Source: Ostrea edulis (taxonomy: Eukaryota). Taken from it: a DNA stretch of 64,000 bases. Below the pieces are notes generated by a model. The model was given only the letters and a program-made list of their open reading frames with translations, did not search any database and was not told where the DNA came from. Numbering within the stretch: the stretch's first letter is position 1; every line of letters begins with the position of its first letter. This document shows positions 660-42,385 of the stretch, piece by piece. The position numbers and the translations under genes are program-made. The DNA is taken from contig NC_079173.1 in assembly GCF_947568905.1 (NCBI RefSeq), forward strand, positions 38,564,001-38,628,000. Direction: 5' to 3'.

Positions 660-665
660 CAGAGG
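660..665 (+). other. Target-site duplication, left copy CAGAGG (right copy CAGGGG at 6950-6955)
   Basis: 5/6 identical hexamers abut both termini; 6 bp is the TSD length made by the Polinton retroviral-type integrase. Confidence 0.7.
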
Positions 666-747
666 AGTAGTATAGAGCGAGGGAATATACGCGCCCTGGC
701 GCAAGTTTTCACCGAAATTTTGCACGTTTGGTCAAGAGGTAAGCCAA

Positions 748-894
748 GGGGGCGGACGTAAGGGAATGAACCAATCAGAAGCCAGAGGGTGAGAGAAGGA
801 ACCAATCAGAATTTAGAAGGAAATATAGATTGTCAGGTTTAGAAATTTATCACGTGATGAAAGGGGTACCAGAGAGGATAATATATAATTATCC
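748..894 (+). promoter_or_regulatory. Inward-facing Pol II promoter-like motif cluster in the terminal region
   Basis: GC box GGGGGCGG 748-755; AACCAATCAGAA twice (769-780, 800-811); E-box TCACGTGA 850-857; TATA-like palindrome GGATAATATATAATTATCC 876-894; all upstream of the macrodomain ATG at 1186. Confidence 0.55.
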
Positions 895-1185
895 ATTGAA
901 AATTTTTCCCTTACATTGGGCCCCTCCGAAGAGAAAAATAAAAATCAATAAGTAATACTGCTGGTCAATGGGGAAAAATCAATATAATTGCTGGTTATGA
1001 ATAATAGATGACTTATTGATTTGGATAAAGAGATCGATGAGAGATGAAAACAATGATATTGTCGGTCAGTTTATGAATAATAAATGAATTATTGATAGGA
1101 AACTTCGCAGGATAAAAACATAATCTTTTCATTTTATGGTTCAATCTGCTAACTTAAAGATACGGAGAGTCGTTCAGAGTGTCCA

Positions 1186-1549
1186 ATGTCCGTGAGATTT
1201 CAATACGGGGATTTGTTAGACGTTAAAGATGTAGACCTTATTTGTCATCAGGTCAATTGTTTAACCGTCAAATCTCATGGACTTTCTCAACAAATTTCTC
1301 GCAAGTATCCGTGGGCCGACATATATAGTGACCGGAAATCATTTCAGGGAAGAAATTTAGCTACGTTTAATACCAGAGGCGTCCCCGGTCACATCAAAAT
1401 GTTTAAAAAAAACCAATCACACAACCATAGTTTGTATGCTAGCTCAATGGGACTACGGGCGTTGCCATGATGTTAGAAAAAAGAACAATCGCAAAGCTGT
1501 GAATTGTCTCGGATATTGTGGCTTTACTGAAATAATTCGGTATATATAG
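1186..1549 (+). pseudogene. Macrodomain (Appr-1-p processing, TARG1/DarG-like class) gene, frameshifted at the A8 run 1405-1412
   Basis: GDLLDVKDVDLICHQVNC...HGLSQQISRKYP motif; the shifted frame from 1424 continues TIVCMLAQWDYGRC...NCL to TAG 1547-1549, matching the macrodomain AQxxYG motif. Confidence 0.75.
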
Positions 1550-1842
1550 TGTTAAGTCTTTCAAATGTAGACAAGGGTGACAAAATATCAACAACTGTTA
1601 ATCCTCTTATGCACGGTTGAACTATATCAACTTATTTATTTTAAAATGTGGAAAAAAGAGAGATAAATCTCAACTAAAGAGAGGATTTTTATTTTTATTC
1701 ATGTAATTTGAGTGACATTGAATTTATCAATTGTACACATAATATGTCAAAACTTGATTCAAGGCCATGTATCCCGAAGACTGAGAAACCACGTTGAATT
1801 CAATGACTCAGACTGCATCTTCTCACAATTAAAAGTTTTCCC

Positions 1843-2089
1843 TCACGATCCAATGCATTCCGATTTGGTCATTTCCAAAGCCTGCGCTACCAGGGTCAAT
1901 AAGGTCACTTTAAGTTCTATCTGTTTGGATGGCGGATCTCTATTTTTTTTTTTTAGATCCGCTTCCCACAATGTAACGTCCCTTGTGATCGGGTCTCTCT
2001 ATTCCCTCCGAAATGTCTTGAAAATGTCGTATCCATTTTTCAAAATCGGGTACGTAAGGCATCCATTTACCAAGTTTGGCATCGTACAT
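1843..2089 (-). pseudogene. Small Polinton-associated ORF MYDAKLGKWMPYVPDFEKWIRHF..., broken at a poly-A run
   Basis: ATG at 2089, 49 aa to TAG 1940-1942 after A12; the shifted frame continues NRDPPSKQIELKVTLLTLVAQALEMTKSE to TGA 1843-1845. Not in the ORF track. Confidence 0.55.
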
Positions 2090-2529
2090 GTACTTCTATG
2101 GATCCCGTCTTCTTTTTTGAGTAAAAGTACACAGTGTGCAGGTTTTTCTAGTTTCAAAGGTTGTAAATTACTTCCCCTTATAAACAATTGTAATCTATCA
2201 AGATTCTGACTTCGTAATGGAAAGAAAAAAGGGCGATCAAAGGTCAGGTGACCGTATACGGTTTCGCGTCCCAAATATGCTCCATTAGGTTCTACGACAG
2301 GTAAGGTCCGTAGTATCCGATACGAGGATCCATTGACGTAGGAATCTCCAATGATATCACAACACACGTGTAGACGTTCGTGGTAAGGCATGTGTAGAGC
2401 AATTTCTAGCAAAGCACATTCCCAACATCCATTTAAATCATAAGTTTTGGGAAGCACCACCGCAAAATCCCCAGGCGTGTTCCCGAAAATTTTGTTGTCG
2501 TCACTGCCCACAAACAAGTAATGTTGCAT
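1999..2529 (-). CDS. Compact Polinton minor capsid (penton)-like protein, 176 aa
   Basis: N-terminal SDDNKIFGNTPGDFAVVLPKTYDLNGCWECALLEI and C-terminal LHVCCDII...ILRTLP...TFDRPFFFPL...LQLFIR...HCVLLL resemble the conserved ends of Maverick penton proteins as I recall them; the variable insertion domain appears absent. Confidence 0.7.
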   Translation of the reverse strand: MQHYLFVGSDDNKIFGNTPGDFAVVLPKTYDLNGCWECALLEIALHMPYHERLHVCCDIIGDSYVNGSSYRILRTLPVVEPNGAYLGRETVYGHLTFDRPFFFPLRSQNLDRLQLFIRGSNLQPLKLEKPAHCVLLLKKEDGIHRSTCTMPNLVNGCLTYPILKNGYDIFKTFRRE

Positions 2530-2755
2530 GTTTCTAATCTTTTGAATGAATTAGATTGTTGTTGCTCTTATGCTTTTAGACCATAAATAATTAAGATACC
2601 TGAATTCCAATAATGTAAGGTCTTCAATAAAAACTGAATGTTCACATTTACGTATTTATACACTAATATATAGTAAAACAATTTCACAACTACAGAGATA
2701 CATCATTTAGAATAAAATGTCACTTAATTGAATGTATAAAGTTTGATCATGTATA

Positions 2756-3004
2756 TCAGAAAAACACCCATTTTGTGATTCTTGACTTCTTTTGAGACGA
2801 CGACGTCAAATTGTCCCGTTGATTTACCACGACTGTTGGTAGTGGCGCGGCTGCAGTAATCGTTCCACATTTTGGCGGCGGCGGCGGAATTTCCCGTGTA
2901 TTTTCTATGGCTGGAGGCGACGACGGCGGACTTGACCGCTGCGGTGACTGTGGAATCGATGGACTGTTGGGCGGCAGCGACGGTGATTTGCCTTTGTTTT
3001 GCAT
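2756..3004 (-). CDS. Pro/Ser-rich paralogue, outer unit (upstream ATG absent)
   Basis: Paralogue of 3304..3684 starting at an internal ATG, with a divergent C-terminus. Confidence 0.35.
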   Translation of the reverse strand: MQNKGKSPSLPPNSPSIPQSPQRSSPPSSPPAIENTREIPPPPPKCGTITAAAPLPTVVVNQRDNLTSSSQKKSRITKWVFF

Positions 3005-3303
3005 GGGAGATTGCGGCGGCGGCGGAGATTGGCGGTCTTTTAGCGGCGGCGGCGGTGGATTTAAAGCTGAGGTTCCTGTGATAATTAAAATAAATACATA
3101 AAGAAAATTTATATTAATGTACTAATGACACAAGGATATTAATTGTGCTTTCTACATAAATGTCCAGTACTTAAGATACCTGAATTCCAATAATGTAAGG
3201 TCTTTAATAAAAACTGAATGTTCACATTTACGTATTTATATACTAATATATAGTAAAACAATTTCACAACTAGAGAGATACACCATTTAGAATAAAATGT
3301 CAC

Positions 3304-3593
3304 TTAATTGAAAGCACAAAGTTTGATAGTGTATATCAGAAAAGCACCCATTTTGTGAGTCTTGAATTTTTGGGGGAGCGGAGGCGTCGTACTGCCCCGT
3401 TGATTTACCACGACTGTTGGTAGTGGCGCGGCTGCAGTAATCGTTCCACATTTTGGCGGCGGCGGCGGAACTCCCCGTGTATTTTCTATGACTGGAGGCG
3501 GCGGCGGCGGACTTGACCGCTGCGGTGACTGTGGAATCGATGGACTGTTGGGCGGCAGCGGCGGTGATTTGCCTTTGTTTTGTATGGGAGATT

Positions 3594-3627
<34 letters not shown>

Positions 3628-3684
3628 AGATTGGCGGTCTTTTAGCGGCGGCGGCGGTAGATTTAAAGCTGAGAATCCTGACAT
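3304..3684 (-). CDS. Pro/Ser-rich protein, 126 aa (inner unit, left arm)
   Basis: ATG start, repeated QSP/KSP/NSP/SSP motifs and poly-Pro (CCG)n; conserved in four copies. Confidence 0.5.
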
Positions 3685-3800
3685 GACTAAAATAAATACA
3701 TAAAGAAAATTTATATTAATGTACTAATGACACAAGGATATTAATTGTGCTTTCTACATAAATGTGATTGATAGTCCTAGGTGTTTTTCGTAAATCTTGG

Positions 3801-3822
3801 TCTTAGTCCTTTTATAGCAAGT
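3801..3822. other. 22-nt central loop of the palindrome (TCTTAGTCCTTTTATAGCAAGT)
   Basis: Only non-symmetric segment; capped by a 35-bp unique stem 3766-3800/3823-3857; partial CTT/AAG pairing inside the loop. Confidence 0.95.
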
Positions 3823-3938
3823 CCAAGATTTACGAAAAACACCTAGGACTATCAATCACATTTATGTAGAAAGCACAATTAATATCCTTGTGTCATTAGT
3901 ACATTAATATAAATTTTCTTTATGTATTTATTTTAGTC

Positions 3939-4307
3939 ATGTCAGGATCCTCAGCTTTAAATCCACCGCCGCCGCCGCTAAAAGACCGCCAATCTCCGCC
4001 GCCGCCGCCGCCGCCGCAATCTCCCATACAAAACAAAGGCAAATCACCGCCGCTGCCGCCCAACAGTCCATCGATTCCACAGTCACCGCAGCGGTCAAGT
4101 CCGCCGCCGCCGCCTCCAGTCATAGAAAATACACGGGGAGTTCCGCCGCCGCCGCCAAAATGTGGAACGATTACTGCAGCCGCGCCACTACCAACAGTCG
4201 TGGTAAATCAACGGGGCAGTACGACGCCTCCGCTCCCCCAAAAATTCAAGACTCACAAAATGGGTGCTTTTCTGATATACACTATCAAACTTTGTGCTTT
4301 CAATTAA
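3939..4307 (+). CDS. Pro/Ser-rich protein, 122 aa (inner unit, right arm)
   Basis: Mirror of 3304..3684 with 7 instead of 11 Pro in the first tract. Confidence 0.5.
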   Translation: MSGSSALNPPPPPLKDRQSPPPPPPPQSPIQNKGKSPPLPPNSPSIPQSPQRSSPPPPPPVIENTRGVPPPPPKCGTITAAAPLPTVVVNQRGSTTPPLPQKFKTHKMGAFLIYTIKLCAFN

Positions 4308-4606
4308 GTGACATTTTATTCTAAATGGTGTATCTCTCTAGTTGTGAAATTGTTTTACTATATATTAGTATATAAATACGTAAATGTGAACATTCAGTTT
4401 TTATTAAAGACCTTACATTATTGGAATTCAGGTATCTTAAGTACTGGACATTTATGTAGAAAGCACAATTAATATCCTTGTGTCATTAGTACATTAATAT
4501 AAATTTTCTTTATGTATTTATTTTAATTATCACAGGAACCTCAGCTTTAAATCCACCGCCGCCGCCGCTAAAAGACCGCCAATCTCCGCCGCCGCCGCAA
4601 TCTCCC

Positions 4607-4855
4607 ATGCAAAACAAAGGCAAATCACCGTCGCTGCCGCCCAACAGTCCATCGATTCCACAGTCACCGCAGCGGTCAAGTCCGCCGTCGTCGCCTCCAG
4701 CCATAGAAAATACACGGGGAGTTCCGCCGCCGCCGCCAAAATGTGGAACGATTACTGCAGCCGCGCCACTACCAACAGTCGTGGTAAATCAACGGTACAG
4801 TATGACGTCGTCGTCTCAAAAGAAGTCAAGACTCACAAAATGGGTGTTTTTCTGA
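4607..4855 (+). CDS. Pro/Ser-rich paralogue, outer unit, right arm
   Basis: Mirror of 2756..3004. Confidence 0.35.
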   Translation: MQNKGKSPSLPPNSPSIPQSPQRSSPPSSPPAIENTRGVPPPPPKCGTITAAAPLPTVVVNQRYSMTSSSQKKSRLTKWVFF

Positions 4856-5081
4856 TATACATGATCAAACTTTATACATTCAATTAAGTGACATTTTATT
4901 CTAAATGATGTATCTCTGTAGTTGTGAAATTGTTTTACTATATATTAGTGTATAAATACGTAAATGTGAACATTCAGTTTTTATTGAAGACCTTACATTA
5001 TTGGAATTCAGGTATCTTAATTATTTATGGTCTAAAAGCATAAGAGCAACAACAATCTAATTCATTCAAAAGATTAGAAAC

Positions 5082-5613
5082 ATGCAACATTACTTGTTTG
5101 TGGGCAGTGACGACAACAAAATTTTCGGGAACACGCCTGGGGATTTTGCGGTGGTGCTTCCCAAAACTTATGATTTAAATGGATGTTGGGAATGTGCTTT
5201 GCTAGAAATTTCTCTACACATGCCTTACCACGAACGTCTACACGTGTGTTGTGATATCATTGGAGATTCCTACGTCAATGGATCCTCGTATCGGATACTA
5301 CGGACCTTACCTGTCGTAGAACCTAATGGAGCATATTTGGGACGCGAAACCGTATACGGTCACCTGACCTTTGATCGCCCTTTTTTTCTTTCCATTACGA
5401 AGTCAGAATCTTGATAGACTACAATTGTTTATAAGGGGAAGTAATTTACAACCTTTGAAACTAGAAAAACCTGTACACTGTGTTCTTTTTCTTAAAAAAG
5501 AAGACGGGATCCATAGAAGTACATGTACGATGCCAAACTTGGTAAATGGATGCCTTACGTACCCGATTTTGAAAAATGGATACGACATTTTCAAGACATT
5601 TCGGAGGGAATAG
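5082..5613 (+). pseudogene. Mirror penton-like gene with a +1 frameshift (T7 vs T6 run near 5381)
   Basis: Split into ORFs 5082..5414 and 5371..5613 that together equal the intact left copy. Confidence 0.7.
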
Positions 5614-5770
5614 AGAGACCTGATCACAAGGGACGTTACATTGTGGGAAGCGGACCTAAAAAAAAAAAAATAGAGATCCGCCGTCCAAACAGATAGAACT
5701 TAAAGTGACCTTATTGACCCTGGTAGCGCAGGCTTTGGAAATGACCAAATCGGAATGCATTGGATCGTGA
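5523..5770 (+). pseudogene. Mirror copy of the small MYDAK ORF
   Basis: ATG 5523, 57 aa to TAG 5694-5696 after A13; the shifted frame runs to TGA 5768-5770; AATAAA twice at 5914-5925 downstream. Confidence 0.55.
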
Positions 5771-6064
5771 GGGAAAACTTTTAATTGTGAGAAGATGCAG
5801 TCTGAGTCATTGAATTCAACGTGGTTTCTCAGTCTTCGGGATACATGGCCTTGAATCAAGTTTTGACATATTATGTGTACAATTGATAAATTCAATGTCA
5901 CTCAAATTACATGAATAAAAATAAAAATCCTCTCTTTAGTTGAGATTTATCTCTCTTTTTTCCACATTTTAAAATAAATAATTTGATATAGTTCAACCGT
6001 GCATAAGAGGGTTTAACAGTTATTGATATTTTGTCACCCTTGTCTACATTTGAAAGACTTAACA

Positions 6065-6429
6065 CTATATATACCGAATTATTTCAGTAAAGCCACAATA
6101 TCCGAGACAATTCACAGCTGTGCGATTGTTCTTTTTTCTAACACCATGGCAACGCCCGTAGTCCCATTGAGCTAGCATACAAACTATGGTTGTGTGATTT
6201 GGTTTTTTTTAAACATTTTGATGTGACAGGGGACGCCTCTGGTATTAAACGTAGCTAAATTTCTTCCCTGAAATGATTTCCGGTCACTATATATGTCGGC
6301 CCACGGATACTTGCGAGAAATTTGTTGAGAAAGTCCATGAGATTTGACGGTTAAACAATTGACCTGATGACAAATAAGGTCTACATCTTTAACGTCTAAC
6401 ATATCCCCGTATTGAAATCTCACGGATAT
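6065..6429 (-). pseudogene. Mirror macrodomain gene copy (start ATG changed to ATA, frameshift beside the A-run)
   Basis: Reverse complement of 1186-1549; ORF track fragment 6184..6423. Confidence 0.72.
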
Positions 6430-6720
6430 TGGACACTCTGAACGACTCTCCGTATCTTTAAGTTAGCAGATTGAACCATAAAATGAAAAGATTATGTTTT
6501 TATCCTGCGAAGTTTCCTATCAATAATTCATTTATTATTCATAAACTGACCGACAATATCATTGTTTTCATCTCTCGTCGATCTCTTTATCCAAATCAAT
6601 AAGTCATCTATTATTCATAACCAGCGATTATATTGATTTTTCCCCACTGACCAGCAGTAGTACTTATTGATTTTTATTTTTCTCTTCGGAGGGGCCCAAT
6701 GTAAGGGAAAAATTTTCAAT

Positions 6721-6867
6721 GGATAATTATATATTATCCTCTCTGGTACCCCTTTCATCACGTGATAAATTTCTAAACCTGACAATCTATATTTCCTTCT
6801 AAATTCTGATTGGTTCCTTCTCTCACCCTCTGACTTCTGACTGGTTCATTCCCTTACGTCCGCCCCC
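6721..6867 (-). promoter_or_regulatory. Mirror copy of the terminal promoter-like cluster
   Basis: Reverse complement of 748-894; one CCAAT box is changed to CCAGT (6840-6844). Confidence 0.5.
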
Positions 6868-7666
6868 TTGGCTTACCTCTTGACCAAACGTGCAAAATTT
6901 CGGTGAAAACTTGCGCCAGGGCGCGTATATTCCCTCGCTCTATACTACTCAGGGGTGCCGACAATTTTAAATGTTCACCGTGTTTTATTTTTTTTTTAAT
7001 ACTTTCAAAAATCTATTTTTGTAATTAGTTACTATAAGTACTCAAGTTTAACCAAAATTATACAGTTGTCTCTCTTTTTTATTCTCAATTATATCAATTT
7101 TAATGGAAGTTGATACATATAGATATATGCAACTTGAAAATATAAACTCGTCTTTGAGATAGACGGTAAAACATTACTATTTGCTGTGGTCCTTTCACTG
7201 CAAGGAATTTGAATTTTTAATCACGATTTTTCAATTATGTCCAATACAGCGGGAAAAAAATGTAGTGTTATGTAGTGGGGGGGGGGATATATCACAAATT
7301 TAAACATCGTGATAGAAAATATACAAGTTCCTAGTATTTTAACAGTTGTGATTTACAACCAGAATAAGCCCAAAAAATATATATTAACCTATGCGTCCAT
7401 TTTTCGTGTATTACACTGTGATTCCCAAAACGTCAACATCATGACGTTATATAGTTTTTCTGTTGCAAAACAACACAAAGTTTCAACGACTGTAAAACGA
7501 AAACTAGAAAAGATATAGTTATAAAATAAATTGTTCTGTAACCTATAACTCGTAGAGCATCAACTGTGAAAGTCTCATTTATTTTGACGAAAGGGCCAAT
7601 TTTAGTACTTTGTGGCTTTGGTTCTTTACAAATTACTAAAGATGTGAGTTTGGTATTAAATTGCAG

Positions 7667-8292: not shown

Positions 8293-8525
8293 TGTTATTC
8301 CCCTTTCAAAGAAGAGTAAATGACCCTTATTTATTTTGAGGTCACAGGGTCAAGGGTCAAACTGGACAATCGACCTAATTAAAATCGGACTCCTTCGATT
8401 TGCGCCATATACTTATACTCTTGAGATAACCTAACTAGGGGGGCGTGTTCATATGAACTAATTAATGTATATGCTGTTTTGTGCTGTATTGTACTGAAGT
8501 GAAATGTTTTGACTGTAACATTTAA
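8293..8525. mobile_element. HINE-like repeat fragment, left part (continues at 9847-10100; uninterrupted paralogue at 33714-34200)
   Basis: Near-identical to 33714-33946; contains the GACCC..TTTTGAGGTCA..GGTCAA motif shared with the 14200-14800 array. Confidence 0.75.
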
Positions 8526-8528
8526 GAA

Positions 8529-8647
8529 ATAAGGTATCATTTAAAAATATTTATCGGGATATAAATACGGGTTGGTCACGTGACAAAATTTAATCATGTA
8601 GAAACCCGTATTTATATCCCGATAAATATTTTAAAATGACACCTTAT
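8529..8647. repeat. Subterminal hairpin of the Crypton, 45-bp arms
   Basis: 8529-8573 pairs with 8603-8647 with 2 mismatches; the loop holds GTCACGTGAC. Confidence 0.9.
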
Positions 8648-9126
8648 TACTTATATTTACATTTTTGGTCGGTAACATTGCTGAATTGTGTTAACAACAC
8701 GTTTCCATACATTTCAAATTGTTGACGTCCACAACGAAGCGTCATATATGTTCAAAATGACGACAACACAAAACAAAGTTCTATAAAATGAAGAACTGTT
8801 TTAATTATTAAGACGCTAGAAAGCAAGTATATCAACATATACTTATACATTAACTCGGGAGTATATAATAGAAAACTCTTCCATGTGTCTAATTTTAGGG
8901 GGTGGGGGAATTATGATTTAAACGGGTATGCGCAGTGTTACACTTAGAGTTGTGATGCGCTTTGACTTTTGAAAAGTGAAGACGTTGAAGACCGACTTTG
9001 AAAGATATTCTGTGGATATTACGGAGTTAACAGAAGACTGAGATGGAGGAACATGAAGAACAGGGCGGCAGTCGTCAGGTGTAGGCAAATTATTTATAGA
9101 CAGGACAACTCGACAGAGGACGCAGC

Positions 9127-18116: not shown

Positions 18117-19519
18117 TGGGCATATCCCACTGAACTCAAAATAAAAGACAACACAGTCGTTCACTTCTGCTTCATATTTATCTATATCTAGCGGTCGTCG
18201 GCGGGGGATGCTTACTCCTCCTAGGCACCTGATCCCACCTCTGGTGTGTCCAGGGGTCCGTGTTTGCCCAACTATCTAATTTGTATTGCTTGTAGGAGTT
18301 ATGAGATTGATCACTGTTCGTTATCTTCACCTTGCATTTATTGAAAGTAAATATAAACGGCGAACTAACACCTGAATTTTATGACAAACGGGATTGTTTC
18401 AGGTTCTTCACTGTCAACCTCATAGATTTATGTAGCATTATTTCATTGTCAACTACATATGGTGTATATATCTCTCCAGTAAGTCGATACACCAGAGTTT
18501 GTCCTGACTTCTGGTCATTTTTAAGTCGAAGCAGGCTACTGAAAAACAAGGTGAAGATGCAGGGGTTCCACAGTCTCATTTAAAGTCAACATTTAGCAAA
18601 TTATATGATCATTGTAGCGATCTGGTTTGCAAACACAACATGGCATTGGGTTAAGTGCTCTCTGACGTGTTTCATACCGATCGTTAGAGTGTTCTTGGCT
18701 CACTAAGTTTGACTACGGATACATTCGTTTACTTGATCAAGATATAAGGCTTATGGTGGGTGTGATCGGTCGACAGGGAGTGTTTGCTCCTCCTTGGCAC
18801 CTTATCCCACCGTTTGTATATCTAGGGTCACGTGTTTGCTAAACTATCTATTGTGTACTGATTATAGGAGTTATCAGATTGGTCACTATTCGCTTTGTTC
18901 ACCTTTCATAAGATTTACCATTGTTCATTATTTTCAATTCCTCATTGATCACTGTTTGGAATCTTCTCATTCTCATCTTCCAGGTATCTAAGGTATCACA
19001 AAGCATGATATATTGTGATGTCAAATATACCATCAATGACTCTTAAACAGCACCTGCACTATTATGATTCATGAGGTATTTAATGACTGTATTTCAAATT
19101 AGTCATCTACCGGTGTATGCTAGCCTGAAATAGATTTTTATGCCATTGCCATGATGTCGTAAAATATCAAAAATGTTTACAAAAAAAAGCAACCTTTCCT
19201 ACACTTACTCTCATTAACATCATTTGCTATAGAAATAATTTGGATCCACATAGATTTATTTATGGTGCTTCTAAGTTTCAAATGTATCAAAACATTAATT
19301 CGGTAACGCTGTTCTTTGATTGTAACTCACGCATCTGAATCATTAAAAAAAATCCTGATTAGCCTTAATTGATCAACGCTACAATCATGAAATACATTAC
19401 TATGTAAACTGATTCAATATTCCAGAGAATAGTATTTGCAATAACTATGGTTAAACACAATAATTAGATACACCAACGATGGTTTATTTATTTTCTAACG
19501 ATAATAGTTTTTATTATAT

Positions 19520-20550: not shown

Positions 20551-21190
20551 GAATATATCCAGTGAGCTGGAAATAAAGGACACCACAGAGTCGTCAACTT
20601 CTGCTTCATACTTAGCTATTTTATTGAAAGTAAACATTAACGGCAAACTGACAACTCAACTGTATGACAAACGGGATGATTTCAGCTTATCCATCGTCAA
20701 CTTCCCATATTTATGTAGCAATATTCCATTATCGCCTGCATATGGTGCTTATATATCTCAACTGATTCGATATGCAAGAGCTTGTTCTGCGTATAGCCCG
20801 TTTTTAAATCGAGGTAAGCTACTGACAAACAAGTTGATGGTACAGGGATTTCAACAGTCTCGATTGAAGTCAGCATTTCGCAAATTCTATGGTCGTTATA
20901 ACGATCTAGTTCGTCAATACAACCTCGCATTGGGTCAAATGCTGTCTGACGTGTTTTATACCGATTGTTAAGCCGTTCTTGGTACACTGATTTTGACTGC
21001 GGAAAATTCCGTTTACTTGATCAGGATATAAGGCTCACAGTGGATGTGACCGGTCAACAGGGGATGCTTACTCCTCCTAGGCACCTGATCCCACCTCTGT
21101 TGTGTCAAGGGGTTAGTGTTTGCTCAACTATCTATTTCGTAATGCTTATAGGAGTTATGAGATTGATCACTGTTCGTTATATTCACCTTA
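20551..21190 (+). mobile_element. Younger 5'-truncated Penelope-like retroelement (RT C-terminus in an open frame to 20971, plus 3' tail)
   Basis: ELEIKDTTESSTSASYL..LYDKRDDFS..IVNFPYLCSNIPLSPAYGAYISQLIRYARACS..SAFRKFYGRYNDLV. Confidence 0.8.
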
Positions 21191-28294: not shown

Positions 28295-28425
28295 NNNNNN
28301 NNNNNNNNNNNNNNNNNNNNNNNNNNNNNNNNNNNNNNNNNNNNNNNNNNNNNNNNNNNNNNNNNNNNNNNNNNNNNNNNNNNNNNNNNNNNNNNNNNNN
28401 NNNNNNNNNNNNNNNNNNNNNNNNA
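28295..28425. other. Assembly gap (131 N)
   Basis: Run of N. Confidence 1.
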
Positions 28426-29918: not shown

Positions 29919-32900
29919 GTAAGGAGTGTGTCAGCTAATATGCATTAAGGATGCAACATATTCAGGCCATATAATGGTGTACAATGTACTGCAATTGCGC
30001 TTGTAGCTTTAATTGTTTTATGCAGCATATGCCGAATATATCAAATTTGCGTAGCGAGGAACGTGATTTCATTCTGAGAAATGGGACTGATGTATATTCT
30101 TATATACAAAATAATGGTGGGTCTGGTGGATATTTGTTGCACAGAGATTTACCTCATACTTTGCAGAACTGGAATCGTGATTATGGTGAAGTTGAATATT
30201 TTTTGACAGGTATTATGTGTCTGCTAGTTCACAATATGTAGTTGACGGTAGAAGAGGGCAATTTTAGAAGCACAGGAGATATCGTCTTTTCACCTCGTTA
30301 CATTTCGTGATAGTATTGTAGCTATATACTATAACAATTTGAATGATGTTGTACATTTGTTTTATTTGCACCAAAGGGATCGATATAGTCTGTCTAGTCC
30401 AAATGGCAATGCTGTGTTGTTGATATTTGAATCCATGGAAGAATTTATTAGATACACAATAAATGTTTATGATGGTTATCAGTTTGAAATAACACCCGTT
30501 TGCTTTGGACGGTTTTCCATTAACAACAGGTCAAGGGATCAACCTTCACACTAGACCAAAAACCCAAAGCAAGAAAACTTTAGTAAAACTGAGAATTGTG
30601 GAAAGGAAAAAATCAAAAACCCTAAACAGAAAAGAAAAAGAAAAAAAATTGTCACCTGAGCAAAATAATAAAGCATACAATCTTTCATTTCACAACTATT
30701 GCAAAACTATAAACAATGGTCAGAAATCATGTCGAAAGAAGAAAAATAACAAACTACATTTCTCAGACTATAATGTATTACACGATGCAAACAAAGAAAT
30801 TTCATGTATTGAGTTTGAAAACTTTTTTTCCCTTTAGATGAGGATTGTTCCCCGACATTAATATATGATTGTTGCTTTGTTGAAAGTAGTAGTGGTATTA
30901 ACTATCAAAATATTGATTATTTAAATGATTCAAATCATGTTAAAAAGTTTGAAGAAGAAATAAGACAATCTACAAACTTTTATTGGGTATGTTGTGAGAG
31001 GTTTTTATTTTAAAATCAGATACACCATTTGAGGCAAACTGTCAATTTACATGACCTGCAAATTAAACAAGATTCCAATTTACGCAAGTTTTGATACATT
31101 TCACTGTTCATTAGTCTATTAATTTTGCTTGGCGGACAGTATGATGAGAAAGGTCTCATACCTAATTTGCCTTGCAACGTCCAAATCGTAGCTGGTCAGT
31201 TGCCTCAAAGTACTAGAGATGTAAATTTAATGAGTGTAAAATAATTGCATGAAAGTCATGCCGCTGACGATGAATGAAAATATTTCGCATATCCATAAAA
31301 ACTTGTAGACGCTTTGAACTGGTTAAAAGCAAATAACACTTTATGCTAATATTTCAGTAGATTTATTTGAATCTGATCATGATGGAGGATTTCACAATTT
31401 GTACAGTCAAAATGAAGTTCTTGAAGCAGAATAATTTACTGCAACCCCTGTAAATAAGACTAATCCAATTCCTAGTATAGAAGAGTTTATAAATAAAGGG
31501 TGTATAGAAGTTCCTAAGATTAAAGAAGGACTTGTGAATGTATATGAACCAGAATCAGGAGAGGAGATGGCATTTCCCAGGCTCTTTCCTCGAGGAGTAA
31601 ATTGTTTTAAATTTCCTCGACAAATGAAGATTCTACGTACAATGTATTTCAGACAAAGACTTTATGAAAGACATGGTTATTTTAGAAACAATATGACTTA
31701 CTTAGTACAAAAAAATATCAGAGGTTCAGTAGCATACTTTAGACACCAATTATACAATCTTTTAGCAACGTTTAAATTTCTAGGTCCCCAACTCTTTTTA
31801 TGACTTTATCTGCTAATAATCTTCATTGGAATGAATTAGTTATGTTGTTAAAGAATGTGAATTACGAATCTGCCATACTTCTTAGCAATTTCATGGATAA
31901 TATGAGACAAGATCCACTATTAACATATATGCATTTTGAAAAGAGATTCAATGCTTTGATGAAAAATTTTGTTTTATCAGAACAGCCGCTTGGTACAGTA
32001 CAAGATTAGTTTGCAAGAGTAGAATTTCAAACTAGAGGGAGCCCACATATACACATGTTTGTGTTGATTGATGGTGTTCCAAATGAAATAACCAAGGAAA
32101 CTGTACTTAGTCTAGTATCATATATATATTGTACAATTAAATAATGTCTTCCAGATATTGAGGATGAAGAACTGAAATATTTTGTTACAAAATTACAAAC
32201 TCAGCCATACAAAATATTGTACAACATTATAAAAAGCTTCTTGTAGATTTGAATTTCCAAAATTGTCCATTTCACCTGTTCCTTACGGGTGGAGCTGGTG
32301 TTGGAAAAACATATATAACAAAAGTTCTATTATCTTACATTCAGCACTACTGCGCGAAGGTTCCAAATTCTAATCCTGTGGTGGTATGTGCACGTATAGG
32401 ATCTGCATCTAATAGCATTAATGGGCGTACTTTGCATTCTGTATTTAGAATTTCAGTTTTCTTCAGCATGGCTCATTATCTAGTTATAGTATATCAAAGT
32501 TACGACAAGAATTAAAAAAAATGTGCATACAATTGTTATTGATGAAATCAGTATGGTGAGCAGTGAAATGTTTTCATTTATAAGCCGGCGACTATCAGAG
32601 AAATGTCTTTGGGGGTTGCAATGTTATTGTAACTGGTGATTTTTTTCAACTTAGACCAGTAAAAGGTAGCTTTTGTTTTGCAAATGTGTTACTTGGCAAG
32701 TTTTTGATTCTATATTTTTAACGGAAAACGTGCGACAGAAAAATGATCATTCATATTCTGCTTTGTTAAATCGTGTTAGGATATGTTATCCAAGTGATGA
32801 AGATAATTGGCAACTTAAAACAAGATTAGTATATAACACACAAGTGAACTGTTCTGAAGATTTGCACATCTTTTCAACTAGAAAGCAGGTTGAAATATAT

Positions 32901-33542
32901 AACAAAGAACAACTGAGTAAATTATGCAACAGAACATTTGTTATTCCTGCTGAACATCATTTTTCATCATCTGAACAAAATGCATATGTGCATGTTCCCA
33001 TGAACATGATACCGCTTGATGATAATCTTGCTGGTGGTTTGGAAAGAGATTTGATGATTTCAATTAATTCTAGAGTGATGTTGACAAGAAATATCAATAC
33101 TGATCAGGGATTAGTGAATGGCGTAATGGGCATTGTAACAGATATTGAATTTATAGGGAGCATTCCATCCAATATCGATGTACAATTTGACAACCCTACA
33201 ACTGGATGAGTCATATGTAATGGTAAAAACACAGTTCAAACACCTGTCCCTATTCAGCGCATTGAATGCGAGTTTATTTATACGGGGCATCATGTTATTA
33301 GATCACAGTTTCCTTTGATTTTACCATAGGCATGTACTGTACATAAGGTACAAGGCACATCATTGGACTCAGCAGTTGTAGACCAGAAGAGTGCAGTATT
33401 TGATTATAGAATGGCTTATGTAGCTCTTAGTAGAGTCAGAACTCGGTCTGGTTTGATACTTATTCGTTTAGATCCCATGAAAATCAAGGCTAGTGAGTCA
33501 GTTATCAATGAATATGAAAGGTTTAAAAATTCAACAAATTAA
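29919..33542 (+). pseudogene. Helitron RepHel pseudogene: C76-like protease, Rep (HUH) and PIF1-type helicase, with an internal deletion
   Basis: GVQCTAIAL (C at ~29985); LNWLKANN; EMAFPRLFPRG; GSVAYF; TLSANNLHW; RVEFQTRGSPHIH 32016-32054; TGGAGVGKT 32285-32311; DEISM 32541; GDFFQL; LTENVRQ; HKVQG 33342; YVALSR; many stops and frameshifts; stop at 33540-33542. Confidence 0.9.
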
Positions 33543-35269: not shown

Positions 35270-36050
35270 TATATTTGCATGAGATGTTTAAAGCAGGATT
35301 TATTTAACATCTTCTGCGTGATAAGAAAGAACCTCTTGCTGTGACCTTCAATTCGACATTTACATGTATCGACGACCTATTATTGATCAACAATAATAGT
35401 TTTCAATCATATGTAGACTGGATATATCCCACTGAACTCAAATTAAAAGACAACACAGTCGTCCACTTCTGCTTCATATTCATGTATATTTATTGAAAGT
35501 AGATATAAAAGGCGAACTAAGAACTCAGTTTTATGACTAACGGGATTGTCTCAAATTCTTCATTATTAATTTCCCAGATTGGTGTAGCAATATTCCATTG
35601 TCACCGGCATATGGTTTATATATCTCTCTAGTGATTCGATACAAAAGAGCTTGTCCTGACTTATAGTCATTTTACAATCGAAGCAAGCTACTGACAAACA
35701 AGGTGATGGTGCAGGGGTTCCCACAGTCTCGTTTAAAATCAACATTTTGCAAAGAATATGGTCATTGTAGCTATCTGATTTGCCAAAACAACATGACATT
35801 GGATTAAGTGCTGTCTGACGTGTTTCATACCGATACTTAGAGCGTTCTTGGGACACTAAGTTTGACTACGGATACATTCTTTTACCTGATCAAGATATAA
35901 GGCTCACGGTGGGTGTGATCGGTCGAAAGGGGATGTTTAGTCCTCCTAGCCACCTCATCCCACCGTTTGTTTATCTAGGAGCACATGGTTGCTAAACTCT
36001 CTACTGTGTTCTAATTGTTCATTGATCACTGTTCGGAATATTCGCAATTT
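35270..36050 (+). pseudogene. Penelope-like RT fragment, block B paralogue of 17500-18905 without the insertions
   Basis: Collinear sequence. Confidence 0.75.
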
Positions 36051-39000
36051 CATCTTTCTGGTATCTAAGATATCACAAAGCATGACTTATTATGATGTCA
36101 AATATGTCATGAATGACTCTTAAAATGGCTCCTGCACTATTATGATTCATGGGGTATTTAATGACTGTATTTCAAATTAGTCATCTACAGGTGTATGCTA
36201 ATATGAAATAGACTTTTATGCCATTGTGATGATGACGTAAATATATCAAAAATGTTTACAAAACAAAAAACCTTTCCTACATTTACTCTCATTAATATCA
36301 TTTGTTATAGAAATGATGTGTATCCACATAGACATATTTATGGTGCTTTTAAGTTCCTAAATGCATCAAAGAATTAATTCGGTAACGTTGTTCTTTGATT
36401 GTTACTCACTCATCCGAATAATAAAAAACAAATCCTGATTAGCCTTAATTGGTCACGCTACAATCATGATATACATTACTATGTAAACTGATTCAATATT
36501 CTAGAGAATGGTATTTGCACTAACTATGGTTAAACACAAGAATTAGATACACCAACGATGGTTTATTTAATTTCTAACGATAATATTATTTTTCATATGT
36601 TAATTAAACATAACACAGTCAACTCGAAATATTTTTTTTAAAATTAATTGTATAGTTGGATTTTCCCCCTGAACGCAGGTGTTCATGATTAACGAATACA
36701 TCAACGTAATGGTAAATGGGATATTTTCAGGTTCTTCCTCATCGCCTTCCTGCATCTATGCAGCAATATTCTATTATTATAGTGTTATGTTATCTATGTA
36801 TCCCAAATGATGGAATACATCAAAACTTTTTCTGCTGACTGACAATTTGGTTTGGCATTTATTATTGACTCAGATTAGGTTTCCAAACTATGATTCTAAA
36901 TCAAAAAATTGTACGATTTGTAATACTTTTTAGGCAAATTTACTCGAAATTATGACCCAATGTCGAAAGATGAACGAATGAGTTATAATTAACGATCTTA
37001 TCTCAACTATAAAAGGATTATTTACTCAACACTAGACGATAAATGCACCACTGCTACATAAATATCGGAAACTAACGATGGCGAAGCTAAACTAATCCCA
37101 CTTGAAATAAACTCGAATTGTTAGTTTGCTGTTAATAACTTTTTCCAATAAAGTATCTAAATGCGAAGCAGATGTGGAATCTGTGATATCTTTTTTGTTC
37201 AAATTCACAGGGATATATCAATCGATATATAAATGAAAATTAGTATTTTCAATCAATAAGACGTCATTGATATGTGTAGATATTAAGTTGAAGTCAGCAG
37301 GAAGAATTTTTTTCTTCTCATGCAGAAACCTTTGATTGAACTATGCTTTTTAAGAATATGAAAACAGGTCATCTAAAAACGGAACAAAATCCGTACCCAT
37401 ATAAATTTCAGCAGACTGTTGGAAAACCTGATCATCGGAGGCTAGGGAGATATCATCGACAAGGAACTCCAACATGCTTTGTTTTATTTCAACTTTAGGG
37501 TATCTGTGCCTGGTATAAGAGTGATGGCTAACAAAGTAATATTTTGCATTACTGATCACTAGATACGAATATTTCGTTTTTCAATTTTTGCTGAAAAATG
37601 TCTCCATAATGTCTCCAAGTCTAGTCTTTGATTTATCGTGATGAGTTGTTGTGTAAAATATTGAAAAGCCATGCAGTTTGATGTTGTGGGTTTCAGAAAA
37701 GCTTTTGCGATTTCAAATCTAAAAGAAATCTTAAAATGTTTTTCAATACATTTTTGATGTACAGTATTTATGACATATGTTGTGACACAGTATGTTTGAT
37801 TTTGTTTTATTTTACAGTTGTTAATATTTTCATAAGAAGCAAAGATAGGGACTTTGTACAAAGTTTGCCCCATCCAGTAATGTATCTTTGTTTGTAAAGG
37901 TTTTTTCTGAAGGTTGGGAATCCAATATAGATACGGTAACTCATATTCTTCTATCCCATTGAATGGGATGTTAAATGTGTCTAAAACTGAAAATCATGAT
38001 TTTGAAGATTTTCATCTTTTGATTACCAAATGTGGAAATATTACCAAATGTCTGAAAAATACAGGTGTGATAATGAGTCGTTTAATCAATGGAAAGATAA
38101 TAAAATATTCCAGAATCAGGAAACTGCATTTTCTACAGTTTTGAATATGCTCAGTCTAAATAAGGCATAGTGCATCTTTGTAAGATAACTAAATGTATAT
38201 TTCATATGACATGATCACAGATTCCACATCAGTTCACACAAAAATCATACACAAACAAAAACAATTTTTCTGTGTATATTGTGTACAGTATTAGATGTAC
38301 AGATATGTTGACATGTGTACATGGAAAAAGAGGGGATAATGCTTACTTCGAATCATATTCTATAACATTTAGAATGCTTGACCTTTTCATGAAATATCAT
38401 GAATATTGATGCGTCTTCTCGGGATATTATTAGATTGTGACTTATTAGATTCTGACTAATGATACATGATATTAATTCTTAATGCACAATACATGTGAAA
38501 AACACTCTAGTAATTAGCACTGTAGTGATATCCAAAATTAACAGGTATTCATGTATGGCTTCAAACTTTACGAGCTCCGTCGTTTGGGATGTAAGTGATA
38601 AACAAACGCCCACAAAAAGTCATTCACTTTATCGGAACTATATCGACCCGAAGCAATGATCCCATAATTTATATAACTACAAAATGTATTACTATTATCA
38701 TTAATGAGACCAAGAATTGCATTTAGATCGTTTAATATTGGTCTATCGTTGAGGTAGGCAAAACTATATTGAAATGTAGGTAAACTTTTCAAAGAATGTA
38801 TTATTTTTTAGTCAAATGCAAAAATATACGATAAAAACACTTACATCTTTGTATTGAGAGACAACGATGGGTATAGGCGTAAAATCTTTGTCAAATCAAT
38901 CTCAACTGATATTTATACACACATGTACGTTGAAGTATGGTATCGTTTTCTTTTCAATCACAAAGTGGGGGATTTGTTTTTTGCCCGAAATTGATGATGC

Positions 39001-41956: not shown

Positions 41957-42385
41957 TACATATTCCATATGCAAGAGCTTGTTCTGGGTATAGTCAGTTT
42001 TTAAATCGAGGTAAGCTACTGACAAAAAAGTTGATGGTACAGGGATTTCAACAGTCTCGATTGAAGTCAGCATTTCGCAAATTCTATGGTCGTTATAACG
42101 ATCGAGTTCGTCAATACAACCTCCCATTGGGTGAAATGCTGTCTGACGTGTTTCATACCGATTGTTAAGCCGTTCTTAGCACACTGATTTGACTGCGGAT
42201 AACTCCGTTTACCTGATCAGGATATGGGGCTCACGGCGGGTGTGACCGGTCAGCAGGGGATGCTTGCTCCTCCTGGGCACCTGATCCCACCTCTGGTGTG
42301 TCCAGGGGTCCGTGTTTGCCCAACTATCTATTTTGTATTGCTTGTAGGAGCTATGAAAATGATCACTGTTCGTTATCTTCACTTT
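41957..42385 (+). mobile_element. 5'-truncated Penelope-like insertion (RT end plus tail)
   Basis: YARACSGYSQFLNRGKLL..SAFRKFYGRY; absent from the paralogue at ~23970. Confidence 0.8.

What the first reader, a model, noticed from the sequence alone, without database searches (positions are those of the whole stretch)
666..6949. Integrated 6.3-kb snap-back palindrome made from one end of a Polinton/adintovirus
Seen: two ~3.1-kb arms are reverse complements separated by only 22 nt. Both ends are Polinton-type termini (AGTAGT...ACTACT). The arms carry a macrodomain, a penton-like gene, a small ORF and Pro-rich cassettes, but no pPolB, integrase, ATPase, protease or major capsid. Established: Polintons are thought to replicate as linear DNA by protein-primed polymerase, and linear replicons such as yeast linear plasmids and AAV throw off hairpin or snap-back defective genomes with two identical origins. 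Inference: this is a defective-interfering or satellite-like Polinton genome, made by fold-back during replication, carrying the same origin at both ends, and copied and integrated by a helper. It may represent a class of parasites of Polintons.
Basis: partly seen in the sequence, partly recalled or inferred. Interest (0 to 1): 0.9.

Follow-up and report, generated by a model that had tools for sequence, protein, structure and literature searches.

The report
Palindromic remnant of a Polinton element
A 6.3-kb stretch of this (probably mollusc) genome is a real mirror-image duplication of the already damaged right-hand part of a Polinton/Maverick virus-like transposon. It has proper element ends on both sides, but nothing here shows that it is more than a single decayed copy.

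Summary
Window 666-6949 is a palindrome with arms of 3135 and 3127 nt, 99.0% identical, around a 22-nt spacer. It is bounded by the canonical Maverick end motif (AGT)2//(ACT)2 and by a 5-of-6 matching 6-bp duplication.

- The 146-residue core of ORF 1999-2529 folds as a single jelly roll. It is closest to an adintovirus protein, a PBCV-1 capsid chain and the mavirus penton.
- The "macrodomain" belongs to a family whose profile hits solved macrodomains.
- Full-length relatives carry pPolB, A32-type ATPase, adenain-like protease, rve integrase and TBP.

The arm is not simply "one end". It is colinear with the right half of a full-length relative but has at least two internal deletions. It also carries frameshifts and truncations shared by both arms, so the precursor was already defective.

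Fold-back during protein-primed replication followed by integration in trans is plausible (about 0.4). Extension of the inverted repeat in the chromosome by break repair is nearly as likely (about 0.35). A mis-assembly is less likely (about 0.1).

I found no second copy, no helper with this terminus and no evidence of interference. I rate it a new variant of a known kind, of moderate interest.

The parts
660..665 (.). Left copy of the 6-bp target-site duplication (CAGAGG)
   Evidence: It matches 5 of 6 bases of 6950-6955; chance probability 0.0046.
666..3800 (+). Left arm of the palindrome (3135 nt), starting with the (AGT)2 end motif at 666-671
   Evidence: End motif as described for Mavericks in PMC8097293.
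666..1185 (+). Non-coding terminal leader of the left arm, with a duplicated CCAAT-box-like motif (about 758-826), upstream of the inward-reading macro gene. Mirror copy at 6430-6949.
   Evidence: Sequence. Repeat I15.
1186..1486 (+). Macrodomain gene fragment, left copy. It covers the N-terminal ~100 of ~170 residues. Broken: at least one frameshift plus a 3' truncation.
   Evidence: 64% identity over 74 residues to a Pinctada imbricata macro-domain protein. The family profile hits solved macrodomains at E 1e-14. Coverage and frame counts.
1765..1805 (-). 41-nt trace matching the 5' part of the 417-aa (major-capsid-position) gene of the full-length relative
   Evidence: blastn, 80% identity, E 6e-5. 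Weak.
1858..2089 (-). Fragment of the small gene in the PW position (112-117 aa in relatives), left copy. It covers residues 6-80. Broken: one frame change plus a 3' truncation.
   Evidence: tblastn. Gene order.
1999..2529 (-). Penton-like (minor capsid, single jelly roll) ORF, left copy. It is open and 176 aa long; residues 1-146 (2092-2529) match the family, and the ORF runs 30 codons past the usual end.
   Evidence: Homologues. AlphaFold2 pLDDT 91.7. Foldseek hits.
2588..3167 (-). Pro-rich cassette, left unit 1. It is a partial copy of the 158-184-aa zinc-finger/Pro-rich gene found in the PZ position of relatives, and lacks the N-terminal ~65 residues.
3168..3765 (-). Pro-rich cassette, left unit 2, 93.4% identical to unit 1. 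It contains a (GCG)11 run at 3594-3627.
3801..3822 (.). 22-nt unique spacer at the centre of the palindrome
3823..6949 (-). Right arm of the palindrome (3127 nt), ending with (ACT)2 at 6944-6949
3858..5023 (+). Two Pro-rich cassettes of the right arm, mirror images of 2588-3765
5082..5613 (+). Penton-like gene, right copy. Broken: one frameshift splits it into two overlapping ORFs.
5523..5755 (+). PW-position gene fragment, right copy. Same kind of lesions as the left copy.
6128..6429 (-). Macrodomain gene fragment, right copy. Broken: at least one frameshift plus a 3' truncation, as in the left copy.
6950..6955 (.). Right copy of the target-site duplication (CAGGGG)

Best explanation
This is a real, integrated, non-autonomous and now decayed derivative of a Polinton/Maverick element. 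One fold-back (snap-back) copying event made its two halves mirror images.

The precursor was already defective. It kept the right terminus, a truncated macrodomain accessory gene, the minor-capsid (penton-like) gene, part of the PW-position gene and two tandem partial copies of a Pro-rich gene. It had lost TBP, integrase, major capsid, protease and the whole polymerase/ATPase module.

Most likely sequence of events, all inferred:
1. A linear copy of this defective element was being replicated from its (AGT)2 terminus by a protein-primed polymerase supplied in trans.
2. A nascent or displaced strand ending just upstream of the Pro-rich cassettes folded back on itself and was extended to the terminus.
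3. The next round of replication turned this into a duplex with the same terminus at both ends.
4. An rve integrase supplied in trans inserted that duplex, making the 6-bp duplication.

Since then the arms have diverged by about 1%, and one arm's penton-like gene has acquired a frameshift. Nothing suggests any present function.

Shown: the structure, the termini, the gene identities, and that the lesions predate the duplication. Inferred: where and how the fold-back occurred, and that helpers acted.
For: - Exact symmetry: the arms end within a 22-nt spacer. There are only two termini in the window, so this is not two separate insertions.
- The outer limits of the palindrome coincide to the base with the (AGT)2//(ACT)2 Maverick end motif and a 5/6 6-bp duplication (PMC8097293).
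- The terminal 100 nt are identical in both arms. Arm divergence is roughly even over the outer 2.2 kb, with no older outer segment. This fits both ends originating at the same time.
- Arm differences are mainly substitutions with a transition excess (20:11), plus a microsatellite length change. These look like real mutations, not read errors.
- The arm is colinear with full-length relatives whose genes are pPolB (close homologues carry PF03175), A32 ATPase, Peptidase_C5, rve and TBP. A protein-primed polymerase and an integrase therefore exist in this lineage.
- Integrase-deleted derivatives of a sister lineage occur as several structurally different, 98-99% identical copies in different samples.
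- Snap-back genomes are a major class of defective genomes of AAV (PMC8235507).
Against: - Only one copy is known, and no full-length element with this terminus was available.
- Both arms share frameshifts and truncations. The precursor had therefore decayed before the event, which is simpler if it sat in the chromosome the whole time.
- The target duplication has one mismatch. At the arms' 1-1.3% divergence this is expected only about 6-8% of the time (my calculation). That hints that the insertion is older than the palindrome.
- Protein-primed replication of Polintons has not been observed directly (my knowledge).
Confidence: 0.42

Rival explanations
1. The inverted repeat was extended in place. 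A defective element with ordinary short terminal inverted repeats was already integrated. A double-strand break or stalled fork occurred in its left part. The left terminal repeat paired with the right one, DNA synthesis copied the right part inward for about 3 kb, and end joining closed the gap, leaving the 22-nt spacer as filler. No helper, episome or new integration is needed.
For: - Lesions shared by both arms show the template was an old, decayed copy.
- The target duplication carries a mismatch although the arms differ by only ~1%.
- In related elements the same Pro-rich region is a rearrangement hot spot. L001 and L014 have ~530-nt tandem duplications. L015 has a head-to-head duplication with arms of at least 318 nt and 92% complementarity, and L016 has another inverted arrangement.
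- A (GCG)11 run lies near the centre.
- Most Maverick loci in vertebrate genomes are eroded in place (PMC8097293).
Against: - If the original terminal repeats were old, the outermost segment should be more diverged than the newly copied part. Instead the tips are identical for 100 nt, and divergence is even over the outer 2.2 kb. This fits only if the original repeats were very short or were kept homogeneous.
- It requires a rare 3-kb synthesis tract followed by non-homologous joining.
Confidence: 0.35
2. Assembly artefact. Either a fold-back chimeric read was built into the contig, or a normal element with long inverted repeats had its unique core collapsed out.
For: Palindromes are a known product of fold-back chimeric long reads and of repeat collapse (my knowledge). 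I could not inspect reads. The window's own ORFs are not on record in any other assembly, so there is no independent confirmation.
Against: - The arms differ by 31 substitutions with a transition bias and by a microsatellite length change, not by the indel noise of a single molecule read twice.
- The palindrome stops exactly at canonical element termini with a target duplication, and the flanks are not mirrored.
- There is no gap near it; the only N run is at 28295-28424.
- Both arms contain the same deletion junctions and broken genes. They are therefore not the intact long repeats of a functional element with a hidden core.
Confidence: 0.1
3. One reading: a currently functional defective-interfering or satellite genome that represents a class of parasites of Polintons.
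For: Both termini are intact and identical over 100 nt, so the cis signals may still be usable. One penton-like ORF is still open.
Against: - Every other gene is truncated or frameshifted.
- The arms have drifted apart by 1%, and one penton copy is broken.
- It is a single copy in 64 kb, and the centre junction is absent from the JGI metagenome collection.
- No helper with this terminus was seen.
Confidence: 0.1

Closest known systems
Polinton/Maverick elements (polintoviruses; animal adintoviruses)
   Same: (AGT)2//(ACT)2 end motif, 6-bp target duplication and terminal inverted repeats. There is a single-jelly-roll minor capsid gene. In relatives the gene order is integrase, minor capsid, PW-position gene, 417-aa gene, protease, the same as the second module of vertebrate Mavericks. 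The relatives encode pPolB, A32-type ATPase and rve integrase with a weak chromodomain match.
   Different: There is no polymerase, integrase, ATPase, protease or major capsid gene. The element is 6.3 kb rather than 12.7-24.6 kb. Its inverted repeats are 3.1 kb and cover all but 22 nt, against 46-1447 nt in intact vertebrate Mavericks.
Snap-back defective genomes of linear DNA replicons: AAV snap-back genomes (PMC8235507); adenovirus incomplete genomes and hairpin derivatives of yeast linear plasmids (my knowledge, not checked here)
   Same: An inverted duplication of one genome end, with the same terminal replication signal at both ends and the internal genes lost.
   Different: Those are extrachromosomal molecules seen in infected cells or particles. 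This one is a chromosomal insertion with a target duplication, it is old (1% arm divergence), and its template already carried deletions and frameshifts. Interference has not been shown.
Foldback-type and palindromic non-autonomous DNA transposons (Drosophila FB and Galileo-like long inverted repeats; palindromic MITEs derived from one transposon end; my knowledge)
   Same: A non-autonomous element consisting almost entirely of two long inverted arms derived from an autonomous family, with proper termini and a target duplication.
   Different: Those families are cut-and-paste transposons and are multi-copy. This one derives from a self-synthesising, virus-like element, and only one copy is known.
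Inverted-repeat expansion by break repair or template switching (plastid IR expansion; ODIRA-type inverted duplications, 10.1101/2023.07.03.547456 listed)
   Same: A short pre-existing inverted repeat seeds copying of one arm into the other, leaving a short spacer.
   Different: This has not been demonstrated for Polinton repeats. Here the product ends exactly at the transposon termini.

Membership tests
Polinton/Maverick-derived element | Conserved 6-bp end motif 5'-(AGT)2 // (ACT)2-3' | tested here: met
   666-671 AGTAGT and 6944-6949 ACTACT. Motif definition from PMC8097293.
Polinton/Maverick-derived element | 6-bp target-site duplication | tested here: met
   CAGAGG and CAGGGG match at 5 of 6 positions; chance probability 0.0046. 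Imperfect by one transition.
Polinton/Maverick-derived element | Terminal inverted repeats | tested here: met
   3.1-kb arms at 99.0% identity. This is far longer than the 46-1447 nt reported for intact vertebrate elements.
Autonomous Polinton/Maverick | [quoted passage not shown] | tested here: not met
   No homology in the window. In relatives L006-L013 there is a 934-1186-aa gene whose close homologues carry PF03175.
Autonomous Polinton/Maverick | rve-family integrase | tested here: not met
   tblastn with the relative's integrase finds nothing in either arm. It is present in L004-L013.
Autonomous Polinton/Maverick | Morphogenesis module: major capsid, penton, packaging ATPase, adenain-like protease | tested here: not met
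   Only the penton-like gene is present, plus a 41-nt trace of the 417-aa gene. ATPase (Pox_A32, 30.3 bits) and protease (Peptidase_C5, 21.7 bits) occur in the relatives only. That the 417-aa gene is the major capsid protein rests on its position alone; it has no Pfam or PDB sequence hit.
Penton / minor capsid protein (single jelly roll) | Eight-stranded single jelly-roll fold similar to known pentons | tested here: met
   AlphaFold2 model: pLDDT 91.7, pTM 0.85, all beta. Foldseek PDB hits: PBCV-1 capsid chain 6ncl_a6 at E 2e-5 and mavirus penton 6g41 at E 6e-4, TM 0.64-0.65. BFVD hit: a 161-aa protein of Drosophila-associated adintovirus 2, TM 0.81, E 9e-9. There is no sequence-level hit to Pfam or PDB.
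Penton / minor capsid protein (single jelly roll) | Encoded next to, or one gene away from, the major capsid gene, after the integrase | tested here: met
   In L004-L013 the order is rve, this gene, a 91-117-aa gene, a 409-417-aa gene, then the protease. The same order is reported in PMC8097293 and PMC4028283.
Penton / minor capsid protein (single jelly roll) | Forms pentamers at capsid vertices | not testable with these tools
   No particle or oligomer data.
Macrodomain | Sequence membership in the macro fold family | tested here: met
   A profile of 67 family members hits solved macrodomains at E 1e-14 to 1e-7. Distant members carry PF01661, and sources name them macro-domain proteins. The window ORF is 64% identical to a Pinctada member over 74 residues.
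Macrodomain | Complete domain including the conserved C-terminal glycine-rich segment | tested here: not met
   Only residues 1-100 of about 170 are detectable in either arm.
Snap-back / defective-interfering genome | Inverted duplication of one genome end, with identical termini at both ends | tested here: met
   However, the duplicated part is an internally deleted derivative, not a plain end.
Snap-back / defective-interfering genome | Generated during replication of the parent and dependent on it | not testable with these tools
   The sequence alone cannot separate this from formation in the chromosome.
Snap-back / defective-interfering genome | Interferes with the parent | not testable with these tools
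   No data.
Palindromic non-autonomous transposon family | Several copies at different loci, each with its own target duplication | tested here: inconclusive
   No other copy in the 64-kb window. The centre junction is absent from the JGI metagenome collection. The source genome itself could not be searched.

The most novel reading that the evidence does not exclude
The locus is a chromosomal fossil of a snap-back replication by-product of a Polinton. That would make it indirect sequence evidence that these elements replicate as linear, end-primed extrachromosomal DNA. It would also be the first member of a family of palindromic, helper-dependent parasites of Polintons in molluscs.
Probability: 0.15. 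Interest if true: 0.75.

Novelty: new variant of a known kind. Interest (0 to 1): 0.45.

Why it matters
How Polintons/Mavericks replicate has been inferred from their genes rather than observed. Suppose palindromic derivatives with the same terminus at both ends turned out to be recurrent and inserted at many sites. They would then be a sequence record of fold-back products typical of end-primed linear replicons, and of mobilisation in trans. As it stands, this is one decayed copy that break repair in the chromosome explains about equally well. Its value is as a well-defined search image (terminus, centre junction, arm content) for a census in mollusc genomes. The analysis also identifies a widespread ~140-aa family (1851 clusters at E up to 0.001) as the probable minor capsid protein of a mollusc-associated Polinton lineage.

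Tried and rejected
- **Pfam scans.** Scans of all window ORFs gave nothing. The penton and macro assignments needed structure prediction and family profiles.
- **Rfam.** No RNA family in the window.
- **Exact look-ups.** Look-ups of three window ORFs found nothing on record. The source species is therefore probably not in that collection, and copy number could not be measured.
- **Centre junction scan.** No match in the JGI metagenome collection.
- **Termini in relatives.** I searched L004, L005 and L006 for terminal repeats or an (AGT)2 end comparable to the window's and found none. The helper-with-the-same-terminus test therefore stays open.
- **Empty site.** I looked for a paralogous empty site or repeated flanks in the window and found none.
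- **Step in arm divergence.** I tested for a step that would mark an older original terminal repeat. The only signal is lower divergence in the inner ~900 nt (permutation p 0.04), the opposite of what an old outer repeat would give.
- **Two head-to-head insertions.** Rejected because only two termini exist.
- **L014/L015 divergence point as an element end.** Rejected. There is no end motif there, and the L014 tail looks like a chimeric GC-rich join.
- **L015's second 190-aa ORF as a duplicated penton gene.** Rejected. It is a repeat-derived ORF.

1. One search printed the coordinates of arm-to-arm indels before I knew that some coincide with gene breaks. My early reasoning also mentioned the neighbourhood of one.
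2. One search was a context look-up of a homologue of unknown nature. It returned eight nearly identical ~11.9-kb contigs that turned out to be near-full-length Polinton/adintovirus-like elements from animal sequencing runs. After seeing this I made no look-up aimed at full-length relatives. I used those loci only for gene tables, family scans and coordinate-level comparisons, and I printed none of their sequence.

Full report
**1. The observation**

The palindrome is real in the sequence.
- The inverted-repeat search returns a collinear series of arm pairs covering 665-3804 and 3819-6950.
- Aligning 666-3800 with the reverse complement of 3823-6949 gives arms of 3135 and 3127 nt at 99.0% identity. 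There are 31 substitutions (20 transitions, 11 transversions) and 5 indel events. One indel is a length change in a (GCG)n run. The spacer is 22 nt.
- The terminal 18-mer occurs only at 666 and 6949.
- The ends read AGTAGT...ACTACT. The hexamers outside them, CAGAGG and CAGGGG, match at 5 of 6 positions, with chance probability 0.0046.
- The first 100 nt of the two tips are identical.
- The only N run is far away, at 28295-28424. I left it untouched.

**2. Termini**

A survey of vertebrate Mavericks reports 5'-(AGT)2//(ACT)2-3' as the commonest end motif. It comes with 6-bp target duplications and inverted repeats of 46-1447 nt in elements of 12.7-24.6 kb (PMC8097293). The window element has exactly this motif and a near-perfect 6-bp duplication. 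Its repeats, however, are 3.1 kb long and leave a core of only 22 nt.

**3. Gene content of an arm**

No window ORF hits Pfam, so I worked through relatives.

*Penton-like gene.*
- ORF 1999-2529 (minus strand, 176 aa) has unnamed ~135-146-aa homologues in ENA, JGI and Logan data.
- It belongs to a large family: 1851 clusters at E up to 0.001.
- An AlphaFold2 model of residues 1-146 with 91 aligned sequences is confident (pLDDT 91.7, pTM 0.85) and all beta.
- Its best solved matches are a 167-residue chain of the PBCV-1 capsid (E 2e-5) and the mavirus penton (E 6e-4, TM 0.64-0.65). The PBCV-1 chain is probably the penton P1, the canonical eight-stranded jelly roll without an insertion domain that PMC6344570 describes. 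I could not verify the chain mapping.
- Its best predicted viral match is a 161-aa protein of Drosophila-associated adintovirus 2 (TM 0.81, E 9e-9).

*Macrodomain gene.*
- ORF 1186-1470 is 64% identical over 74 residues to a Pinctada imbricata protein that UniRef names "Macro domain-containing".
- A profile of 67 family members hits solved macrodomains at E 1e-14 to 1e-7.
- Only about the first 100 of ~170 residues are present in either arm.

**4. Relatives and what the arm corresponds to**

Context look-ups gave three kinds of relatives.

*(a) L006-L013.*
- These are eight ~11.9-kb Logan contigs, 99.7-99.9% identical to each other.
- Gene order: a 257-aa zinc-finger protein, a 934-1186-aa protein, a 77-aa gene, a 218-aa Pox_A32-type ATPase, a 109-aa gene, a 158-aa Pro-rich/zinc-finger gene, TBP, rve integrase, the penton-like gene, a 117-aa gene, a 417-aa gene and a 144-aa Peptidase_C5 protease.
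- Close homologues of the large protein carry PF03175 and are named DNA polymerase in mollusc genomes (Mytilus, Pinctada, Tegillarca, Solemya, Haliotis, Crassostrea).

*(b) L004 and L005.*
- These are ENA long contigs with TBP, rve with a weak chromodomain match, the penton-like gene, a small gene, a 409-410-aa gene and two small genes.
- On the other strand they carry PC4-like, BIR and the 172-aa macro gene.

*(c) L001-L003 and L014-L016.*
- These are short ENA contigs from a lineage 76-78% identical in DNA to the window.
- All but the last 72 codons of the integrase are gone.

The order integrase, minor capsid, PW, major capsid, protease is the second module of vertebrate Mavericks. By position, then, the 112-117-aa gene is the PW equivalent, the 409-417-aa gene the major capsid candidate, and the Pro-rich gene sits where PZ does. 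These last three assignments rest on position alone. The 417-aa protein has no Pfam or PDB sequence hit.

**5. The arm is a deleted derivative, not a plain end**

Read from the centre outward, the arm contains:
- two partial Pro-rich cassettes (homologous to L006 6862-7050 and L005 6353-6545),
- the penton-like gene,
- the first ~75 residues of the PW-position gene,
- a 41-nt trace of the 417-aa gene,
- the macro fragment reading inward, and
- the terminus.

This order is colinear with the right half of the full-length relatives. TBP plus integrase are missing, and so is nearly everything from the PW-position gene to the macro gene.

State of the genes (counts only):
- **Macro:** at least one frameshift and a 3' truncation in each arm.
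- **PW-position gene:** one frame change and a 3' truncation in each arm.
- **Pro-rich gene:** four partial copies, each lacking the N-terminal ~65 residues.
- **Penton-like gene:** no break in the left arm, but the ORF runs 30 codons past the usual end. One frameshift in the right arm.
- **Major-capsid-position gene:** a trace only.
- **TBP, integrase, protease, ATPase, polymerase:** absent.

The truncations and frame changes are present in both arms, so they predate the duplication. The tandem cassette units differ by 6.6% while the arms differ by 1.0%. A similar ~530-nt tandem duplication exists in L001 and L014, so that duplication is older and may be a feature of the lineage.

**6. Artefact or real**

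The evidence favours a real palindrome.
- The differences between arms are mostly substitutions with a transition excess, not indel noise.
- The symmetry stops exactly at element termini flanked by a target duplication.
- The flanks are unique and not mirrored.
- A hidden unique core is unlikely, because the arms themselves carry deletion junctions and broken genes.

I could not inspect reads. I put an artefact at about 0.1.

**7. How the palindrome arose**

A symmetric junction with a short spacer is the signature of one fold-back or template-switch copying event. Two settings fit.

*(i) Extrachromosomal.*
- A defective linear copy replicated from its (AGT)2 end by a protein-primed polymerase folds back and becomes a duplex with identical ends.
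- An integrase supplied in trans then inserts it.
- For: both ends are equally young (tips identical over 100 nt, even divergence over the outer 2.2 kb). The lineage has the needed enzymes. Derivatives without integrase exist in several structurally different near-identical copies. Snap-back genomes are common by-products of other linear DNA replicons (PMC8235507).

*(ii) In the chromosome.*
- An old defective insertion with short repeats suffers a break. The left repeat primes on the right one and copies inward, and the gap is closed by end joining.
- For: the template had clearly decayed. The target duplication has a mismatch that is unlikely at the arms' age, about 6-8% by my calculation. 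The Pro-rich region is a rearrangement hot spot in relatives, including a head-to-head duplication in L015 whose left arm is cut by the contig end.

The divergence profile shows only lower divergence in the inner ~900 nt (p 0.04). That fits arm-to-arm conversion near the centre and does not separate the two settings. I lean slightly to (i), at 0.42 against 0.35.

**8. What is not supported**
- I saw no second copy.
- The centre junction is absent from the JGI metagenome collection.
- No other assembly carries the window's ORFs.
- No relative has a recognisable matching terminus.
- "Interfering", "satellite" and "a class of parasites" remain conjecture.
- The literature searches found no description of palindromic Polinton derivatives in the library. 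That is weak evidence of novelty only.

**10. Verdict**

This is a palindromic, non-autonomous, decayed Polinton/Maverick derivative. I rate it a new variant of a known kind, with interest 0.45.

Noticed in passing
window 14000-51000: A cluster of diverged segmental repeats, 66-91% identical and 0.3-1.8 kb long. Several pieces (around 18353-18568, 20636-20920, 35505-35780, 37059-37406, 41962-42117, 44445-44561) encode a protein similar to the 271-aa gene next to the related element in L004. It has no Pfam family, so it is either a host multigene family or another repeat.
   Followed up: partly
window 32673-33209 (+): A 178-aa ORF with a Pif1 2B-domain hit (E 1e-5). It may be a fragment of a Pif1/Helitron-type helicase.
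   Followed up: no
window 28295-28424: A run of 130 N (assembly gap or mask). Left as it is.
   Followed up: no
window 758-826 and mirror 6789-6857: A duplicated CCAAT-box-like motif in the terminal leader, upstream of the inward-reading macro gene. It may be the promoter of the accessory gene or part of the terminal cis signals.
   Followed up: no
window 3594-3627 and its mirror: A (GCG)11 microsatellite inside the Pro-rich cassette, 12 nt shorter in the right arm. It lies about 180 nt from the palindrome centre.
   Followed up: partly
L001-L016 (for example L006 7270-7779, L004 4274-4771 and 5130-5525): This Polinton lineage carries a TATA-binding-protein-domain gene (E 4e-18) just upstream of the integrase. 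Its right accessory region holds PC4-like, BIR and macrodomain genes.
   Followed up: partly
L013 1791-5351: The polymerase of the relatives has a segment matching Vsr-type mismatch endonucleases (residues ~604-675, E 3e-5 to solved Vsr). Its homologues often carry N-terminal C2H2 zinc fingers.
   Followed up: partly
L015 1-638; L001 184-1013; L014 111-950; L016 1-483: In integrase-deleted relatives the Pro-rich region upstream of TBP differs between nearly identical copies. It is tandem in L001 and L014, a head-to-head palindrome in L015 (arms at least 318 nt, cut by the contig end), and another inverted arrangement in L016.
   Followed up: partly
L005 1052-2287, 5587-6124, 10936-11460, 19389-19883: Copies of an unrelated repeat carrying (TTAGG)n-like runs flank and interrupt the related element. 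This suggests nested insertions, and a host different from that of the window.
   Followed up: no
L014 4236-4508: The contig tail switches abruptly to GC-rich sequence unlike the rest. It is probably a chimeric join in the metagenome assembly.
   Followed up: no
window 8520-8656: A small 54-nt inverted repeat with a 29-nt loop, 93% complementary, outside the element. It may be a MITE-like hairpin.
   Followed up: no
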